A stretch of DNA of 56,064 nucleotides, counting the filler, from Platydemus manokwari (Eukaryota), in assembly GCA_037951405.1 (NCBI GenBank). It is 5 parts of 5 records of this genome, joined end to end, with 100 filler letters (N's around TTAATTAATTAA, not from the genome) between each part and the next. Parts side by side here need not be neighbours in the genome. Positions count along the whole stretch, not along the records: positions 37,425 to 46,545 come from JBBMOY011296317.1; 4 more parts are not named here. One strand, 5' to 3'. How positions within the stretch are numbered: position 1 is the stretch's first letter; each line of letters begins with the position of its first letter. A program made the position numbers and the translations under genes. Below, one piece after another: positions 37,425 to 46,545 of this stretch. A model generated the notes under the pieces. It saw only the letters and a program-made list of their open reading frames with translations. It was not told the DNA's origin and searched no databases.

Positions 37425-37739
37425 ATTTCAGTGCACATTGTATCAATGATTGCATCAATATTGATTGTAAGAAATCAAAAACACAATAACTCACACTATG
37501 GAAAACTGATTCAGCATTGATATCAGGTAATAATAAAATAAGAGACCAGTAAAACATTATAAATGAGAAAGATCAGCTAATCTTTCAAATATATCTGATT
37601 TGTAAATGTATGTTTATTTTGTTTGAAATTTCATCGGCTGTATGAGTTTTGTGCCAAAGCAAAAAAATTCTTTTCTGCATTATGAGGTAATCAATAAAAC
37701 AATAAATCAATATTTATCATAGATTTTTTATCATAGACC

Positions 37740-39580
37740 TTGTTTATAATTTTGCTTTTCTACAATCATCGATATAATCACTGTCACAGAGTGATCGATC
37801 CACAGAACAAGTTAGTAATTTTGATAATTGCTTTGGTATGACAAAATGACACAATAGAAATGTAAGTAATGACAACATTAATCTCGAAAACCTAGTTTTC
37901 TTTATTATAAATCCAGTGAAATATTTAGGTGTGTAGTGAGAATCCACATTTGTTTAAAAGATTGATTTATATTTTGACTAATAATGTTAATTTGAGCTTG
38001 ACGATTTGATTGCGCATTGATAGAGTGTTACGGGTGTTTAAATGATTATCAAAATTGTGATTGGATCATCATGAATTCTTGTCTCAATAACAATGAAATG
38101 ATATTCAATTAAAGTACCAAGAAAACTATTTAGAATATTCTCGAACACATTGATTTTCATTATTATCAAACGATTAATTAACTATTTTTTTACATTGTTG
38201 GCATTAGTGAATCAATAATATTGAAAACAACAAAGAAGCTGATCTAATTTATAACACTTACACATAAAAGTGATAACATCATTTAATTTATCAGAAAAAT
38301 TCAGATAAATTAAACAATTATATTAAAGTCAGAGGACCACCATATACTATTTGCATAATTATCTTCATTAAACACATTTTATCCAAAAAAAGGAATCATA
38401 AAAGAAACCAAGCGATCAGATAATCAGATGAAAATTAATATACATTTTTTTTATCATTTCCCTCTAAATAAAATACGCTTGATTTCTTGCGTTTTAATTT
38501 TGTCCCATCCTTATTTATTTCGTACTCCTATTATTCATACGACGTCTGTTATTTTTCCTTTATTACCAGATGAAAACGATGCAATATAAACTTTCTTTTC
38601 TCCAATTTATTTTAAGGAAATTCCATATTATTATTAGATATATTATCGTTATAATTTTTTTTTAATGAAAATAAATCTTTTAATAATAATGATAATTATA
38701 TTATTGAGATTTAAAATTATATCTTTGATTAGATTTTTGTTTATCTGATTTTACTATTGTTTTCACTTGTATTTAATGCATGGAATTAAGTTTTTTCATG
38801 TTTTGATTTATTAGAATCAGAAATGCATTTCTAACAAAATTGTAAAAAATAAAATGAATTTTTATTTCAAAATTGGAATATATATGGGACCAAAATAAAA
38901 GATATTTTAATCATCATAAAAATATTTCCTAACGGTCCATATATTCATGTTTTAATCAATAAATTTGCATACTCTCTTACCATTTCTCCTTTATTCTCTT
39001 TTAATATCATTAATATTTTCTTTTGTATCTTACTAACATTGCATGATCTTGAACAATTTCCTAATTACATTTCAGTCTATAACATGGGTAATCTTCTGCA
39101 CATGATTTTTGAATCTTAACTATGTGCATTGGTCAATTCACATCATCCAAAAATTCCAGGGTTGATCAGGCGTTTTTGTAAGCATACTTAAACAAGGCAA
39201 AAAATAAAAATAGTGAATAAGTTATACATTGCATTGTCATAAATCCAAAATATTTAAGTGTGTAGTAGGAATCCATATTTGTTTAAAAGATTGGCTTATA
39301 TTTTGAATAATGATGACCTTTTGATGTTGAAGACTTGATTGTGGATTAGTGGAGTGATAAAGTTGTTCAAAAAATTATCAACACAGTGATTGGATCATCA
39401 TGAATTCTTAATCAACTTAATAACAATGAAATGATATTCAATTAAAGTGTTTAAAATAAGTATTTAAAATTAAATTTTTGATTGGATATTTTCACCTCAA
39501 ATTTAATTTTGGAAATAGAATATGTATGGGGCCAAAATAAAATATAATTTAATAATCATGAAAATATTCGTATTATAAAA
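37740..39580 (-). mobile_element. Two tandem decayed piggyBac-like transposase fragments
   Basis: Duplicated blocks 37907-38115 ~ 39238-39447 and ~38870-38930 ~ 39512-39570. Minus strand reads QNISQSFKQIWIPTTHLNILD (cf. N..F...Y.P...LSIDE) and KTPDQP..FWMM (cf. KP.KYGIKFW.LC). Confidence 0.5.
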
Positions 39581-39769
39581 TATGACTTGTTTGAATCTGT
39601 CGAGGAGTACAATTACTTTTTAAAATGTCATTATTCGCAAATTTTTTAGATTGTATTAATTATTTCAAAAATAAATCAAATTCTAAAACATGGATTTGTA
39701 AATGATTTATTAAAAGGGAGTATAAGAGACACATATTAAAAGAGCAAATTAAGCTTGGTAAACCAGTCC

Positions 39770-40250
39770 TATCAAAACTTTCCAAGATTTTATTAATTAT
39801 TTATTTTACAACTTTGAATTTTCCTCAATTTCGACATGATAATTTGCTTGAACTAAATATATCATGAGAAAATGTCGCACCATACGCTAAGTCTAATAAT
39901 GTTTGGATATCAGGTACCGGGAAAGAATATCTCATGATCAGAAACACAAACACAAACATATTTCAGAAACACTTCCCGATTGATTAATCTTTCTTTAGTC
40001 AACAACCAAAGAAGAGTTTCAATAGGTCTTGCAAGGTGTTATGACATTACTTTCTAGAAGATTATCTATCAATTCTTGAATCTTTATTTTTGAATTTATT
40101 AGTTGCATTCTAGTGTTCTACGCAATAGGTGCATCCTTTTGTCAGATCTGGTGCTTCATTAAATATGTTAGTCTAAAATCGAAACGAGACGCCTTAAAAG
40201 TTAAACCATTTTCTTTTAAAAACCTATTCAATTAAATATCATTCTTATCA
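39770..40250 (-). mobile_element. Ty3/Gypsy reverse transcriptase relic
   Basis: IQELIDNLLESNVITPCKTY*NSSLVV...YSFPVPDIQTLLDLAYGATFS...NYHVEIEENS matches the Gypsy RT N-terminal motifs. Frameshifted. Confidence 0.75.
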
Positions 40251-40639
40251 GCAATACTCTTCAGCGTTATTTCGATTCTATCTTCGTATTTCTTTTCGAG
40301 GTTTTTGATATCGATTGATACCAATAAATTAATAGTTAATTTTCCCTCATTTTTTTAAAATAAAATATTTTCTTATGATTTATATTTCTGTTTAAGGTTA
40401 ATTCAATCTTCATGTTAGCAAACGGCCCATTGTAATTCTGTAAAATTCAAAATATGTGTTTTAATAGAAATTCTCCTTTGAACTTGTTTTATGAATTATA
40501 AAAAGCTTTCTTCTAAAATTCTTATTATCTTTATACGGATCTTCTTTATTTTATCTGGAATCCAATCATGTTAATTCACCAGTTCTTTCATCAGATTGAT
40601 CTAATAATACAATTCTTATTATACTAGATATTTCCCCAT

Positions 40640-41420
40640 CATATGGAATATTTCCAATTTCTGTACTTCCTAATGTTAATCACAGGGTATCGAATAAAGA
40701 AGAAAATTGATTAATTTCTACAATGATTTTGAAGCCTTCTTTTACATCAGTAGCACTTTTGTCCTTTTTAAATAAATTTCAATTTCATATCTTAAGAAAC
40801 TATTACAAATATCTAACGGATGTGGAATATGAAAGCATTCAAAAGCAATGATAGCAGATTTATTTAAATCAGTTCATGTTATTGCTGATGGATAAAAAAT
40901 ATATAAATTCTCTTTTGTAAAATTATGTTTAAATTTATAAATATTTTTATCTAATTCACTAAATATTTTGATGAATAAAAAAATCTTTTAATTAAAATAT
41001 TTCTTTGCATATATCTTATTTTTTGTCATTTTATTCATATATTCTAATTTATATAATTTTATTAAAATAATACTCTTGTAGAATTATTGAATTATTGTAG
41101 AATTATTATTGAAGCATTATTATGTCCACCTTATTTAGCAGCGGACAATTTTCTAAATTCATAAAATAATTTTCCATTGGATTCACCAGAAGCGACGACT
41201 TTAGATGATTATTATTCAATGCTGTTCCTGATGTACACGGAAAATTTTCAATTTTAGAATTATTTTGATTCATTCTTTTTAACACCTTTAAGATCTCTTG
41301 AATATTTATTTGATGCAAATTGTTGAGCAGAAATTCTTGTTCTCCTTTAAACGTCTAGATGAATATCGATATCTTAAACAAGGAAGTGGCCTTACTTTTT
41401 AGTTTTTCTACATCTACCCC
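40640..41420 (-). mobile_element. Possible non-LTR RT relic
   Basis: Weak motifs AIT*TDLNK, AFECFHIPH and VKEG in RT order. Heavily decayed. Confidence 0.3.
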
Positions 41421-42691
41421 TCCAAGTATTGAATTCCATTGATTTTCATTTAGTTTGACAAAATTTGACAAAAAAGTTGAATTTAATTGATTTTTCTCTT
41501 AATCTTTAATAATAAATTCATGAAATTTACTTTATTGGTAGAATATTTCCGATTCTTCTTAGCGGCAGATTTAATTTATTCTCTCACTTTTCTCTATCAA
41601 GTCTCAGGTTTTTGTGTTCCTGAAAATTGGATGTTAAGCAAGCCGAATATTTTAATTTCAATTTTTGGTGCTTTGTTTAAAAAGTAGTATGTCGCTCGTG
41701 TTTGCTAGTGAGTAAAAAGGTTAGGTAATAGTCTGGTAAATGTGATGTAATAGTTCCAAATTAAGAAGATTATTTTGGTGTACATAAAAACCTAAAAGTT
41801 CCTTAGATTTCGCTTTGGTAAGAGTATTGATTCTGTTATCTTTGCTTTGTTCTTTTCAATATCAATAAAAAGAGCCTTAATGTACTTGTGTAACTTTATC
41901 AAAATCAATAGTGACAGTCCAGTTTAAAGAGTGATATCCTTTGCGAGTTTCATTATTAATAATAAAGAAACTATTTGAATTTCGAAAGAAGAATATCAAA
42001 CAGTAAATAAAAATAAATGAGATAGCAATGTTCATTATATTTCAAATGATAGACATGTTGCCGATGTTAAAATGATAAAATAAATGAATAATATTACAAA
42101 TCCAACATTTAGAGAATATTTAGAAAGAGATTTTCTCAATTTTTATAATTAATTTATAAAAATAACCAATGACATTATTAAACATATCTGTAATTAACTA
42201 ACTCGATTTATCATTATGAAAAATTAAATTTAAAAACTCAAATAATCATATACGATCGCTGTTATTAGAATAGGAACTTGGCTTTCAAGCTATTTTGTCA
42301 CTAATAGATATCTTAAAATTGATATTTTTACTGAAATACACGAATAAATCAAACATAGCAGTTATACACATAAAATTAAGTTATAACATTGTCTAATGCT
42401 CGAAAATTTATTATAATAAAAAAACTCTTTTTCTTAACTTAAGCCGTAAATTATAATTGTGAAACTTTTACAAAATAATAATATTAATGGTTAAAAATTA
42501 AAGTCAGTTGTAAAGACATTGAAGATTTTGTAAAATAATTTTGTTCTAAGTCATTCTGACGTTATTTTATTAATATTTCTGTATTTTTATTTAAAAATAA
42601 TTTAGACCAATAGTATTTAGAAGAAAAAAACTTTATTTATTTATTTGTTTCTTTTATGAATGATATTTAATTATTTTTAAAAAAACATATA

Positions 42692-44666
42692 ATGCAAAAT
42701 ATATCAGTGGAACATAATAGAGAATCAAATGACACTTATAATGAAAAAATTAAGCTAAGTGAGACACGAAATAAATTCGAAACATCTACTGAGCACATTA
42801 TGTATTTAGTCAATAATAAAAATTAAGTGTCTAACGAAACTGAACAAATAATAACAAAAGAAAATATTGTAAATCAAACTATAAAAACTACGCAAAATAA
42901 AAGAATTATTGATTCTTACGAGACTAAATTGAAAGCCGTTGTAATGTATCAAGAAGGATTTACGTTGCACGAAATTGCGAATAAATTTAAAACGTCTTAC
43001 AATAATGTCTGGTATTAGGTCAATAATAAAAATAAAATATTAGAGAAATTTGTTAAAAGCAGAGATCAGATATCACCGGACGAATTAAAAAGATTAGAAA
43101 ACATTATAAATGGAAGCAGGCAAGTTTTGCAAAATGAGGAATTTAAGATTTTTGAAAGTAAATTGAAAGCCATTGAAATGTATCAACAAGGAATTGATCT
43201 TAAAGTTATAGCCGAAACGTTTAAAACGAGTTACCAGCAAATTTATTATTTTGTCCATAGAGAAAGTAAGATATTAGAAAACGCGTTTGATAAACGTAAT
43301 CAGTTATCACCAGAAGAAATAAAAAGGTTAGAGAATATTAAAAATGGAAACCAAGATGTCTTCCAAAAGAAACCACGTATTTCTGCAGAGACTAAATTGA
43401 AAGCCGTTGAAATGTATCAAGAGGGTATCTCATTGAAAGCGATTGAAGATATTTTGCAAGTCTCCTTCAACCACATTAGGTATTGTATCAATAATAAAAA
43501 TAAGATATTAGAAGAATTTGTTAAAAGCACAGATCAGATATCGTCGGACGAATTAAAAAGATTGGAAAACATTATAAATGGAAGCAGGCAAAACTTGCAA
43601 AATAAAAAAATTAAGATTTTTGAAAATAAACTGAAAGCCATTGAAATGTATCGAAATGGAATTGATGTTAAAGTTATAGCTGAAATGTTTCAAACAAGTT
43701 ACCAGCATATTTATTATTTAATCGATAGAGAAAGTAAGTTATCAGAAAAAGCCTTTAACAAATGTGATCAGATATCACCGGACGAAATGAAAAGGTTAGA
43801 AAATATTAAAAATGGAAAACAAAATGTCTTCCAAAAGAGAACACGTATTTCTGATGAGATTAAATTGAAAGCTATTGAGATGTATCAAGAAGGATTTACG
43901 TTGCACGAAATTGCGAATAAATTTGAAACGTCTTACAATAATGTCTGGTGTTGGGTCAATAATAAAAATAAGATTTTAGAAAATTTTGTTAAAAGCAGTG
44001 ATCAGATATCACTGGACGAAATGAAAAGGTTAGAAAATATTAAAAATGAAAACCAAGAAGTCTTCCAAAAGAAAACACCTATTTCTGACGAGTCTAAATT
44101 GAAAACTGTTGAAATGTATCAAAAGGGTATGTCAATGCCAGCAATTGCAGATAATTTTCAAACATCCCTCAACCACGTTTGTTATTGGGAACAAAATAGA
44201 AGTAAAATATTTGAAAATGTTTCAAAAAATAATGATCAGATCTCACTTGAAGAATTTAAAAGATTAGAAAATGTTTTAAATGGAAACAGGCGTGAGTTAC
44301 AAACGAAAAAGTGCAAAGTCTCCACAGATAATAAATTTAATTCCATTGAAATGGATAGAAAGGATTTCCAAGCAAAACCCTATCTGAAAAGCGTTGGTCA
44401 GACTGATTATAAATTATTGGAAAAAGACAAAGCACAATGATCAGATATTATTAAAGGATGGATCTGAAAGTTTAGATTTATCTGTAAATTTATTGAAAAA
44501 TGAAAGTGTATGGTTTGATGAAATGTTAGTAAAAAAGAAAAATGAAACAAAAGAAGATTTTAATAGAAAAAATACAAAGAGAAAAATAACTGACACTGAA
44601 AATACAAATGAATTCAAGAAAATACGACATGAATTTCCTATAAATATAAAATTGGAAGAAATGTAA
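42692..44666 (+). pseudogene. Tandem helix-turn-helix (CENP-B N/psq/Brinker-like) repeat protein, 78-aa period
   Basis: One reading frame from ATG 42692 through ORFs 42827-43018 and 43127-44440, with in-frame TAA 42824 and TAG 43016 and a frame change after ~44355. Repeat consensus RIS.E.KLKAIEMYQEG.....IA..F.TS...V.Y.V....KI. KLK codons fall at 42926, 43160, 43394, 43628, 43862, 44096 and 44333. Confidence 0.75.
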
Positions 44667-45789
44667 TTGCAATAGATCATTGATAGATCATTACTTTAAT
44701 TCTGTCACTTTAATCGAAATATTTAACTTAATTACTTTAATAAAATTTATGTTTTATAAATTTTCAAATACTTTCAGTTTTATTTTATTTATTATAAAAG
44801 CTTTGATTTCAGAATAGAATATTATCATTAATATCATTATCATCATTATTATTCGAAAGATTCTTAGTTATATTTAGTTAGATTTAAAAAAATTATCATT
44901 TTTGACGAAATTTAAATCTAATTTTCATATCTAAAATAATTATTGTATTTGAAGGAAAACACGAAATTATATAAATTATATAAATATAGTTTAGAAGAAT
45001 GGCTTTTGGATATTATATCTTTAATTATAAATGAAATTTTATCAGTTCGTATTTTCTCTTACTACATCGAAAAATGGATTTTCGTTTAATAAAAGTGAGT
45101 GATGAAATTTTCTGTTTATCACGTCCATAATTAATTTTTACTAGTTTCCATAATATTTATTTATATCAAATTATTATCCAAGATTTAAACAAAAACAGCT
45201 ATAAAATGTTCCCACATCATGCTTTTTAAATTCATTAGAAATTTCTTAGCAAAAACATCGTTTCTATAATTTCATCTATAAAATAAAATATCATTTTCTC
45301 ACTCTTTAAAACAATTTCAAATTTTTTTTCTTATACTAATTGTTGTTTCTCATAATTAAGTAAGGGCGAGGAAATTCAGAAATTATTGACTTTAGTCACC
45401 GTCTTTTTTGACTTAACATTTCAAAGCTTTACATTTTAACAATTTCTCTATCCTTTTACCGATGTTAACACCATTTACTGTACAATTAGGATTATTTTAG
45501 AAGAATTTCATAAGTATCAGTTTTTTGCTTTTTCAGTTTTCTTTTGATGTGAAGTTATTAAAATAATATTTTTATTTCAGAATGTGTTGTCATTCAATGG
45601 TTATTGTTGTTACAAGATTTATTCAATACAAATTTGTTGGAATTATTGGATTGATTGTGACCTGCTTGGGTCCGAAAGCTTTTGTTCGAGAAGTCATTTT
45701 TGCATTTTCATTCATTCATCTCGGCTTTTCGTTTGGTTGAAATTGTTTGATTCTATGTTGTGTTAGATAATATCTATCAAAACACTGGT

Positions 45790-46255
45790 TGAGTGAAATT
45801 GCCAGATTTTTGCCGAATGTTCAATATTTGAAATTACACACTCTTTGACCATAATCTAGATTTTTATTTTTTTTAGATTTTATTTTTCGACACGCCAATT
45901 TTTGCCAAAATTGATTCCTTTGATGCCGGAACTGTACCGAGTGAGCCTATAATGTTTGTGAAAAACTCAATATTGAAATCCGGTTTCAATTTGGCGAGCT
46001 CATTCCTAAATTCAGTATAATAAATTACATTATTTTTGTTTGGCTGCTCGAAGATTTGTATTGTGTCGATTGTACATTTCATGTCTTCCGGAAAGATCTT
46101 TCTTCGCTCTACTAATAAATCGATGCGGTCTTTTCTGTCCGGTTACAGTAAGCACATTTGGTTAACTACTACAATAATATTTTTTGATCGAAGACAGTCA
46201 ACAATTTTGTTCAGGCATGCATCATGGCGAGGAGTTTGTAGCTTTTTGTTCGCGT
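45790..46255 (-). mobile_element. RLE non-LTR retrotransposon C-terminal endonuclease fragment
   Basis: TPRHDACLNKIVD...RIDLL...EDMKCTID...IIGSLGT correspond to the RHD/RPD/D.K/GxLG motifs. Confidence 0.8.
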
Positions 46256-46545
46256 TGTAGATCGTTCGATTGATGCTAGTATGGTGAGCTGAATTCCTGT
46301 TTGATACCCAATTTTGAACACGCCTCTCACATAAATTTTCCTCCAAATTGTTTCCCGTTATCAGATAGAATGCTCTTTGGCTTTCCAAAACGATATATCC
46401 ACGAGTTCAAAATGACCTGGAAAATTGTCTTTTCGTCTTGCTTAGATGTAGCAGTGAGGCTCACTAGATTGCTGAATCTGTCGATAATGACTACTAAGTA
46501 CTTCTTGTTACTATGCATCGCGTCCATTTGTGCAATGTCCACCAC
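46256..46545 (-). mobile_element. Ty3/Gypsy integrase core fragment
   Basis: VDIAQM..KKYLVVIIDRFS...WIYRFGKPKSILSDNGKQF..ACSKLGIKQEFSSPY*HQSND matches the rve core. Confidence 0.88.

What the first reader, a model, noticed from the sequence alone, without database searches (positions are those of the whole stretch)
42692..44666. Modular array of HTH domains with an exact 78-aa period and variable recognition helices
Seen: six full modules spaced exactly 234 nt apart, a seventh at +237 nt, and a partial N-terminal one. The scaffold (KLKA.EMY..G, DQIS..E.KRLENI.NG) is conserved. The predicted recognition helix varies: SYNNVWY*, SYQQIYYF, SFNHIRYC, SYQHIYYL, SYNNVWCW, SLNHVCYW. No DDE domain or TIRs were seen. 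Known: this pattern resembles the first HTH of pogo/Tigger/CENP-B and of psq/Brinker domains, usually present in one to a few copies. Inference: a transposase-derived DNA-binding module amplified into a ZF/TALE-like array whose specificity could be set by module choice, possibly a lineage-specific family targeting TEs or satellites.
Basis: partly seen in the sequence, partly recalled or inferred. Interest (0 to 1): 0.78.

Follow-up and report, generated by a model that had tools for sequence, protein, structure and literature searches.

The report
Tandem array of helix-turn-helix modules
A single-exon reading frame in an AT-rich eukaryotic genome encodes six complete and two decayed copies of a 78-residue DNA-binding-type module; it evolved as real coding sequence and belongs to a multi-copy family, but this copy carries two early stop codons, and similar unstudied arrays turn out to be fairly common.

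Summary
Module starts lie at 42920, 43154, 43388, 43622, 43856 and 44090 (234 nt apart), then 44327 (+237). A decayed module sits at each end.

The "variable recognition helices" are therefore mostly two types plus one divergent module.

- **Fold:** residues 1-40 of a module fold as a three-helix HTH (pLDDT 86-92). A conserved, low-confidence helical spacer follows.
- **Family:** Pfam places the protein in HTH_23/HTH_28. CENP-B_N is below threshold here but clearly met in the nearest relative, P0001.
- **Selection:** 1 stop in six modules against 18.5 ± 4 expected, pN/pS 0.43-0.57, all indels in whole codons. The array diverged under purifying selection.
- **Copy number:** contigs of a same-species run show many diverged copies and versions with one module more or fewer.
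- **Damage:** TAA at 42824 and TAG at 43016 interrupt the first 110 codons.
- **Rarity:** a profile search found 123 protein clusters (E ≤ 1e-10), most of those listed with 4-13 such HTHs, all unannotated.

Verdict: a real, probably recently disabled member of a lineage-specific multi-HTH family. DNA binding is inferred. A TALE-like code is untested.

The parts
42692..42826 (+). Start of the reading frame (ATG 42692), running through decayed module 0 to an in-frame TAA at 42824-42826
   Evidence: Intact modules have Lys (AAA) at the homologous place. The only X1 contig laid there reads A at 42824 (AAA).
42686..42919 (+). Module 0: decayed N-terminal module that keeps only the helix-3 and post-helix relic
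   Evidence: translation; the repeat finder family D12, 42794-42823 against 43472-43501, 87%.
42920..43153 (+). Module 1 (type A, 78 codons) with in-frame TAG 43016-43018 where other modules have Trp (TGG)
   Evidence: In X1, 43017 reads G in depth 245 of 273; the remaining ~28 (about single-copy depth) keeps the window's A.
43154..43387 (+). Module 2 (type B, 78 codons)
   Evidence: 86% nt and 69% aa identity to module 4.
43388..43621 (+). Module 3 (type A, 78 codons); the module that was folded
   Evidence: AF2 with alignment A1: helices 2-11, 16-23 and 27-35 at pLDDT 86-92, then helices 37-50 and 53-72 at pLDDT 72-60.
43622..43855 (+). Module 4 (type B, 78 codons)
43856..44089 (+). Module 5: type A HTH (84% nt identity to module 1) joined to a type B spacer end, a recombinant module
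   Evidence: alignment.
44090..44326 (+). Module 6: divergent module of 79 codons (one extra codon)
   Evidence: 42-54% aa identity to the other modules.
44327..44440 (+). Module 7: decayed, truncated module that ends at TGA 44438-44440
   Evidence: An X1 contig matches 44326-44529 with 0 differences.
43019..44440 (+). Longest uninterrupted frame (473 codons; listed as a 437-aa ORF from TTG 43127)
44441..44840 (+). 3' tail amplified together with the array in the related run. It holds a +1-frame ORF (44394-44666) that still shows an 'NDQI' relic of the spacer motif
   Evidence: (summed depth 111-250 against 21-31 further right).

Best explanation
This is a single-exon member of a lineage-specific, multi-copy gene family of an AT-rich eukaryote. 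It encodes a string of independent three-helix HTH domains. Each 78-residue module has four parts: a short arm (basic before type A heads), a transposase-type HTH (Pfam HTH_23/HTH_28, CENP-B_N/psq-like), an 'NNKNKILE'-type cap, and a conserved spacer (DQIS..E.KRLENI.NG) predicted helical at low confidence. The array grew by tandem duplication of a two-module (A+B, 468 nt) unit. Unequal crossing-over then reshuffled it, producing recombinant module 5, decayed modules at both edges, and copies with one module more or fewer in a related run. The modules diverged under purifying selection with spacing held to whole codons, so the encoded protein was functional. The most likely function, by inference, is multivalent sequence-specific DNA binding. 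In that model each helix 3 sits in a major groove and the spacer sets the distance between sub-sites, as in the four psq repeats of Pipsqueak. The copy in the window has two nonsense codons in its first 110 codons. It is therefore probably a recently disabled copy, or at best an N-terminally truncated one.
For: Shown: (1) Periodicity of 234 and 468 nt. (2) Stop codons: 0 in 473 codons against 23-72 in the other frames. A neutral simulation at the observed divergence gives 18.5 +/- 4.0 stops in six modules (minimum 6 in 5000 runs) against 1 observed, and differences are in excess at third codon positions (83/75/118). (3) Pooled pN/pS is 0.43 for same-type pairs and 0.57 for all pairs; Fisher p is 0.0002-0.014 for pairs 1-3, 1-5 and 3-6. 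(4) Pfam HTH_23 1.3e-22 with 5 stretches, HTH_28 6e-18, HTH_7 1e-13. (5) The AF2 module gives three helices at pLDDT 86-92, and a three-module model has pTM 0.28, i.e. no confident arrangement of one domain relative to another, as expected for beads on a string. (6) Structural neighbours are all HTH DNA binders, including the paired domain, LCoR, IstA, CENP-B (Z 5.1), Brinker (Z 4.5) and Dan (Z 4.4). (7) The nearest relative, P0001, has six modules at an exact 62-aa period although they are only 31-48% identical. Its ORF is intact, and it scores CENP-B_N 5e-25. (8) In run X1, 886 contig pieces were laid, most of them under 95% identical. Summed depth is 300-1200 on the array against 21-54 on the flanks, and joints skip or repeat 234 nt. 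Inferred: DNA binding, the spacing role of the spacer, and pseudogene status.
Against: Expression is unknown, because no RNA run holds the stretch. No intact paralogue was actually read end to end. Depth summed over contigs is not a true copy number. Structural matches are weak in absolute terms (Foldseek E > 1, Z about 5), as expected for a 40-residue domain. The spacer is modelled at low confidence. Pair 2-4 alone does not reject neutrality (p = 0.34). The source organism could not be identified.
Confidence: 0.62

Rival explanations
1. The unit is the cargo or ORF of a mobile element, for example a non-autonomous or pogo-derived DNA transposon whose N-terminal HTH was amplified. On this view its multi-copy state reflects transposition, and the array binds the element's own ends or repeats.
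For: The HTH type is the one found at the N-terminus of pogo/Tc1/IS630/IS3 transposases. A roughly 2.1-kb unit (about 42770-44840) is multi-copy while both flanks are near single-copy depth in X1. The unit is intronless. TE debris lies nearby: a high-copy repeat left of 42420 and a decayed integrase at 45700-46545.
Against: No DDE or other catalytic domain appears in the ORF or in any flanking ORF. No convincing terminal inverted repeats were found: the best inverted match between the two boundary zones is 15 nt. The only flanking direct repeat (42654-42685 / 44861-44892, 78%) is of a quality that is common by chance in this AT-rich piece. Purifying selection on the protein fits a host gene family equally well.
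Confidence: 0.2
2. It is a non-functional minisatellite-like amplification of a fragment that once encoded an HTH. On this view the open frame only reflects the youth of the repeat.
For: Decayed modules sit at both edges. There are two nonsense codons and a frameshifted 3' relic. No expression data exist.
Against: The modules differ by 14-39% in nucleotides, yet show 1 stop against 18.5 +/- 4 expected. pN/pS is 0.43-0.57 and the only length change is one whole codon. The relative P0001 keeps an intact array of much more diverged modules.
Confidence: 0.08
3. The helical repeats serve as a protein-protein, RNA-binding or structural scaffold rather than a DNA reader, with the HTH fold reused for another purpose.
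For: The spacer is conserved as strongly as the HTH (pN 0.20 against 0.23). The best PDB sequence hit of the profile is a designed helical repeat protein. Bacterial relatives combine such arrays with ankyrin repeats and signal peptides.
Against: Every natural structural neighbour of the confident part is a DNA-binding HTH. The conserved Thr-Ser N-cap of helix 3 and the basic arm before type A heads are typical of DNA-contacting HTHs (established knowledge of CENP-B, Brinker and paired domains).
Confidence: 0.1

Closest known systems
Pipsqueak (Psq) of Drosophila and the psq/CENP-B HTH superfamily (Siegmund and Lehmann 2002, as cited in PMC10027918)
   Same: It also has several tandem copies of a transposase-derived three-helix HTH within one protein. 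The fold is the same (2cob LCoR 1.2 A over 37 columns, 2elh Dan Z 4.4, 2glo Brinker Z 4.5). The family is known for lineage-specific expansions, e.g. 43 HTH-Psq genes in Hydra.
   Different: Psq has four repeats of about 50 residues and an N-terminal BTB domain (own knowledge). The window has six to eight modules of 78 residues with a conserved 25-36-residue spacer, an A/B dimer period and no BTB. HTH_psq is not among the 25 best Pfam families listed.
CENP-B and pogo/Tigger transposase N-terminal DNA-binding region (PDB 1hlv)
   Same: The HTH type is the same: a basic arm, then helix 1 ending in ..G, helix 2 with ..IA..F, a T/S cap, helix 3, and a 'K.K..L' cap. 1hlv gives Z 5.1. The relative P0001 scores CENP-B_N 5e-25.
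   Different: CENP-B and pogo have two different HTHs (CENP-B_N plus HTH_Tnp_Tc5) followed by a DDE domain. Here a single HTH type is repeated, no DDE is present, and the window protein scores only 17.9 bits against a cut-off of 21.2.
Unannotated multi-HTH array proteins in metagenomes (P0001-P0150)
   Same: They have 4-13 tandem HTHs of the same profile. P0001 has an exact 62-residue period. The N/K-rich, apparently eukaryotic members (P0003, P0005, P0008, P0011, P0016, P0031, P0071) have closely similar helix 1-3 motifs.
   Different: Their periods are mostly 50-62 residues. The DQIS..KRLEN spacer occurs in none of them. Some are bacterial, carry ankyrin repeats or a signal peptide, and match the IS3-type HTH_Tnp_1.
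C2H2 zinc-finger arrays and TALE repeats
   Same: They are modular DNA-reading units at a fixed period, and they evolve by unequal crossing-over with more variation in the reading positions.
   Different: The fold is unrelated. One-module-one-subsite reading is not shown here. Only two module types plus one divergent module are present, and pN/pS of helix 3 is 0.72, not above 1.

Membership tests
Pfam HTH_23 / HTH_28 (homeodomain-like, transposase-type HTH) | Whole-protein score above the curated gathering cut-off | tested here: met
   HTH_23 scores 79.4 bits against 24.6 (5 stretches) and HTH_28 scores 65 against 25.
Pfam HTH_23 / HTH_28 (homeodomain-like, transposase-type HTH) | Three-helix helix-turn-helix fold | tested here: met
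   AF2 gives helices 2-11, 16-23 and 27-35 at pLDDT 86-92. The neighbours are HTH DNA binders at rmsd 0.6-2 A over 33-41 columns.
CENP-B_N (PF04218) | Score above the gathering cut-off | tested here: not met
   The window protein scores 17.9 bits against 21.2, E 0.0025. The feature is met in relatives: P0001 87.3 bits, P0071 81.6, P0031 61.3.
pogo/Tigger transposase or CENP-B-like domesticated transposase | Second HTH (HTH_Tnp_Tc5) and DDE_1 catalytic or relic domain downstream | tested here: not met
   Neither family is listed for the ORF or for flanking ORFs. No long ORF lies within 5 kb upstream or 2 kb downstream.
DNA transposon (element as a whole) | Terminal inverted repeats at the ends of the multi-copy unit | tested here: not met
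   The best inverted match between 42430-42930 and 44440-45100 is 15 nt. Pair I1 is only 71% complementary.
Pipsqueak family | HTH_psq (PF05225) match and, for the Psq subgroup, an N-terminal BTB domain | tested here: not met
   Neither is among the 25 best families shown for E up to 1. The ORF starts directly with a decayed HTH module.
Pipsqueak family | Tandem repetition of the HTH within one polypeptide | tested here: met
   Six complete and two decayed modules lie in one frame.
ZF/TALE-like programmable array | Each module reads a defined adjacent sub-site, so that module order sets the target | not testable with these tools
   This needs binding data. The sequence shows only a fixed period and somewhat higher amino-acid turnover in helix 3.
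Functional gene (as opposed to pseudogene), for this copy | Uninterrupted frame from a start codon | tested here: not met
   TAA at 42824 and TAG at 43016 follow ATG 42692. The first ATG after the TAG lies inside helix 1 of module 2.

The most novel reading that the evidence does not exclude
The window samples a so far undescribed class of eukaryotic DNA-binding proteins. In this class transposase-derived HTH modules are strung at a strictly fixed period (78 residues here, 62 in P0001). Module number and order would be reshuffled by unequal crossing-over to retarget the protein, as a fast-evolving reader of repeats or transposons analogous to KRAB zinc-finger arrays.
Probability: 0.15. Interest if true: 0.8.

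Novelty: new variant of a known kind. Interest (0 to 1): 0.5.

Why it matters
Multi-copy arrays of one DNA-reading module are the basis of zinc-finger and TALE biology and engineering. HTH domains are usually thought of as working singly, in pairs, or at most four in a row (Pipsqueak). This locus shows long HTH arrays at a fixed period that are maintained by selection. The 123 unannotated clusters found with its profile, many with 4-13 HTHs, show that such arrays recur in eukaryote-like and bacterial sequences, and none has been studied. If the modules read adjacent DNA sub-sites, the family would be a new natural modular DNA-recognition system and a case of transposon-domain domestication by amplification. 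If not, it remains a tidy example of a higher-order coding repeat that evolves by unequal crossing-over.

Tried and rejected
- **Ciliate-type code (TAA/TAG read as Gln).** It was tempting because the frame ends in TGA and the two internal stops are TAA and TAG. It is rejected because Gln is written CAA/CAG 37 times against 2, and the stops sit where paralogous modules have Lys and Trp.
- **Stops as assembly errors.** This is unlikely for the TAG. At 43017, X1 keeps about 28 of 273 depth with the window's A, which is about single-copy depth.
- **RNA genes.** Rfam and tRNA scans of the piece found nothing.
- **PDB by sequence.** The whole protein gave no hit. The profile gave only weak HTH hits and a designed repeat protein.
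- **Word-indexed protein search.** It returned one relative only.
- **Exact look-up of three window ORFs.** None is on record.
- **JGI metagenome scan.** The protein found no relative.
- **ESM Atlas.** It was busy for the window protein. For P0001 it gave only generic transposase-HTH clusters.
- **Cluster look-ups.** They gave no names for the eukaryote-like relatives, so the source organism stays unidentified.
- **Upstream exons or domains.** No ORF of 35 aa or more in 37425-42690 looks coding, and those scanned had no Pfam match.
- **Literature.** I found no description of psq/CENP-B_N arrays longer than four.

Full report
**Setting**

Only the piece 37425-46545 of the window is genome. It has 20-30% G+C and no long ORF except the one in question. 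It has no tRNA or Rfam match. At its right edge it carries a decayed retrotransposon integrase: rve scores 1e-11 on 46327-46545 (minus strand), and the frame continues only through stops and frameshifts. This is non-coding-rich, transposon-littered eukaryotic DNA. I could not identify the species, because the sequencing-run names are coded and the relatives carry no source names.

**Observation**

Tandem Repeats Finder reports period 234 (67-68% matches) and also period 468 (76-79% matches, score up to 1552) over 42913-44287. The repeat finder gives spacings of 234 five times and then 237. Identity to the first copy alternates 66/82/65/79%.

In the frame of ATG 42692 the anatomy is as follows:
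- module 0, decayed (42686-42919);
- modules 1-5, 78 codons each, starting at 42920, 43154, 43388, 43622 and 43856;
- module 6, 79 codons (44090-44326);
- a 38-codon stump of module 7 that ends at TGA 44438-44440.

It still shows an 'NDQI' relic, so the last module lost about 11 codons with a frameshift.

Modules 1, 3 and 5 share one head type, here called A (post-helix 'NNKNKILE'). Modules 2 and 4 share another, called B ('RESK'). Module 5 joins an A head to a B-type spacer end. Module 6 is divergent. A basic arm (Q-K-K-x-R-I-S) precedes every A-type head, and an acidic or hydrophobic arm (N-E-E-F-K-I-F) precedes the B heads.

**Coding sequence or drifting repeat?**

The frame 43019-44437 has 0 stops. 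The other two forward frames have 27 and 72, and the reverse frames have 23-30. I mutated the module consensus to each module's observed distance (23-63 differences per 234 nt), using the local base composition. This gave 18.5 ± 4.0 stops in six modules, and never fewer than 6 in 5000 runs. One stop is observed. Observed differences favour third codon positions, 83/75/118.

Nei-Gojobori pN/pS is 0.24-0.72 for all 15 pairs, pooled 0.43 for same-type pairs and 0.57 for all pairs. Synonymous changes exceed non-synonymous ones significantly in pairs 1-3, 1-5 and 3-6 (p = 0.0002-0.014) but not in pair 2-4. The only length change among modules 1-6 is one whole codon. The array therefore diverged under purifying selection.

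Helix 3 changes faster in amino acids than helices 1-2 (pN 0.37 against 0.23; pN/pS 0.72 against 0.47). The ratio never exceeds 1, and the pairs are not independent, so diversifying selection is not shown.

**What the module is**

Pfam gives HTH_23 1.3e-22 (5 stretches), HTH_28 6e-18 and HTH_7 1e-13. CENP-B_N reaches only 17.9 bits against a cut-off of 21.2.

AlphaFold2 on module 3, with an 11-row module alignment (A1), gives helices 2-11, 16-23 and 27-35 at pLDDT 86-92. Two further helices (37-50, 53-72) follow at pLDDT 72-60.

Foldseek finds only HTH DNA-binding domains. E-values are above 1, as expected for a domain of 40 residues, but the superpositions are tight: paired domain 1.7 Å over 39 columns, LCoR psq-type HTH 1.2 Å over 37, IstA transposase 0.6 Å over 33. 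The Foldseek-independent search lists CENP-B-DNA 1hlv (Z 5.1), Brinker 2glo (Z 4.5) and Distal antenna 2elh (Z 4.4), among sigma-70 region 4 and response-regulator HTHs.

A three-module model made without an alignment has confident HTHs, weak linkers and pTM 0.28, so the domains are not confidently placed relative to one another, as expected for beads on a string.

**Relatives**

The word-indexed search found one protein, P0001 (367 aa, ENA metagenome; E 1e-24). It is an intact ATG-to-stop ORF on a 3.1-kb contig of 25.8% G+C. It has six modules at an exact 62-residue period. Its modules are only 31-48% identical to one another, yet the period and the frame are intact. It scores CENP-B_N 5e-25. 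This is independent evidence that a fixed period is maintained by selection in this kind of protein. It also ties the window's modules to the CENP-B_N/psq type.

An exhaustive profile search with A1 against 1.84 billion representatives gave 1199 hits at E ≤ 1e-3 and 123 at E ≤ 1e-10. Most of the 150 listed have 4-13 matched stretches, with periods mostly 50-60 residues.

Some of these are N/K-rich and look eukaryotic (P0003, P0005, P0008, P0011, P0016, P0031, P0071). Most of them exceed the CENP-B_N cut-off (P0003, P0011, P0016, P0031, P0071). Others are bacterial. P0002 lies on a 2.66-Mb contig beside ParE and AbiE genes, and P0004 and P0006 add ankyrin repeats.

None carries a source name except two labelled 'transposase(-like)'. 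The spacer motif DQIS..KRLEN occurs in none of them. I found no paper describing arrays of this HTH longer than the four psq repeats of Pipsqueak. A survey of transposon-derived transcription factors does report lineage-specific HTH-Psq expansions.

**Copy number and dynamics**

Two DNA runs hold parts of the stretch. On X1, which is the same species by its near-identical flank contigs, 886 contig pieces were laid. Of these, 691 were below 95% identity.

Summed depth is 300-1200 over the array and 111-250 over the 3' tail (44368-44837). It is 39-54 on the left flank (42488-42675) and 21-31 on the right flank (44838-45100). Cross-laying between modules of this locus can explain at most a factor of two or three, since only pairs 1-5 and 2-4 reach about 85% identity. 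The genome therefore holds many diverged copies of a unit of about 2.1 kb. Summed contig depth is only a rough guide to their number.

Joints that skip 234 nt, go back 234 nt, or span about 4 × 234 nt show versions with different module counts.

No terminal inverted repeats bound the unit. The flanking direct repeat (42654-42685 / 44861-44892, 78%) is no better than many chance pairs in this piece.

**State of this copy**

TAA 42824-42826 replaces a Lys codon, and TAG 43016-43018 replaces the Trp of helix 3 in module 1. A ciliate-type code is excluded by 37 CAA/CAG against 2 TAA/TAG.

In X1, position 43017 reads G (TGG) in depth 245 of 273. The remaining ~28 keeps the window's A, which is about single-copy depth. 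The TAG is therefore probably real, and other copies have Trp. The only contig laid over 42824 reads AAA, but it comes from a diverged copy.

This copy is thus most likely a recently disabled family member. After the TAG, 473 codons remain open, but the first ATG lies inside helix 1 of module 2.

**Mechanism and confidence**

Shown:
- an array of HTH folds at a fixed period;
- a coding constraint during divergence;
- a multi-copy family with variable module number.

Inferred:
- the protein binds DNA through several helix-3 elements at once;
- A and B modules read different sub-sites;
- the conserved spacer sets the distance between sub-sites.

I give this reading about 0.6. The rivals are cargo of a mobile element (0.2), a scaffold that does not bind DNA (0.1) and a non-functional minisatellite (0.08). 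It has no direct support, and I put it at about 0.15.

**Limits**

- Only the one read-laying run returned contigs only, so starts, strands and RNA levels are unknown.
- No paralogue was read in full.
- The organism is unknown.

Noticed in passing
window 42300-42420 (extends left of 42300): A very high-copy repeat lies about 270 nt upstream of the ATG. Summed depth in run X1 is about 37,500 (42300-42393) and 3,000 (42394-42487), against 20-55 in the neighbouring sequence. About 90 variant contigs were laid, and loose ends at 42366 and 42414-42416 mark its right end.
   Followed up: no
window 45700-46545, minus strand: A decayed retrotransposon integrase. rve scores 1e-11 on 46327-46545, and the 'SSPY*HQSN' continuation is interrupted by stops and frameshifts. 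It is cut by the edge of the piece.
   Followed up: partly
window 37919-38115 and 39248-39448: A pair of direct repeats of about 200 nt, 1.33 kb apart (81% over 162 nt, then 97% over 33 nt). It could be a small LTR-like or duplicated element.
   Followed up: no
L001 1488-2591 (protein P0001): A metagenomic relative with six HTH modules at an exact 62-residue (186-nt) period, although the modules are only 31-48% identical. Its ORF is intact and the contig has 25.8% G+C.
   Followed up: partly
proteins P0002, P0004, P0006 (ENA; P0002 and P0004 on one 2.66-Mb contig): Bacterial proteins with 8-11 tandem transposase-type HTHs. P0002 has a hydrophobic N-terminus, and P0004 and P0006 have N-terminal ankyrin repeats. 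P0002 lies beside ParE and AbiE genes. They are possibly secreted DNA-binding effectors of an intracellular bacterium.
   Followed up: partly
proteins P0011, P0031, P0062: N/K-rich relatives with 1-3 HTHs share a C-terminal helical region ending in an 'SDYF..I..RY' motif. It has no Pfam match. P0062, with a single HTH, is very close to the window's type A head and may resemble the progenitor architecture.
   Followed up: no
window 42654-42685 and 44861-44892: A 32-nt direct repeat (78%), each copy ending in a run of seven A, sits at both edges of the multi-copy unit. Its quality is no better than chance pairs in this AT-rich piece, so I gave it no weight.
   Followed up: partly
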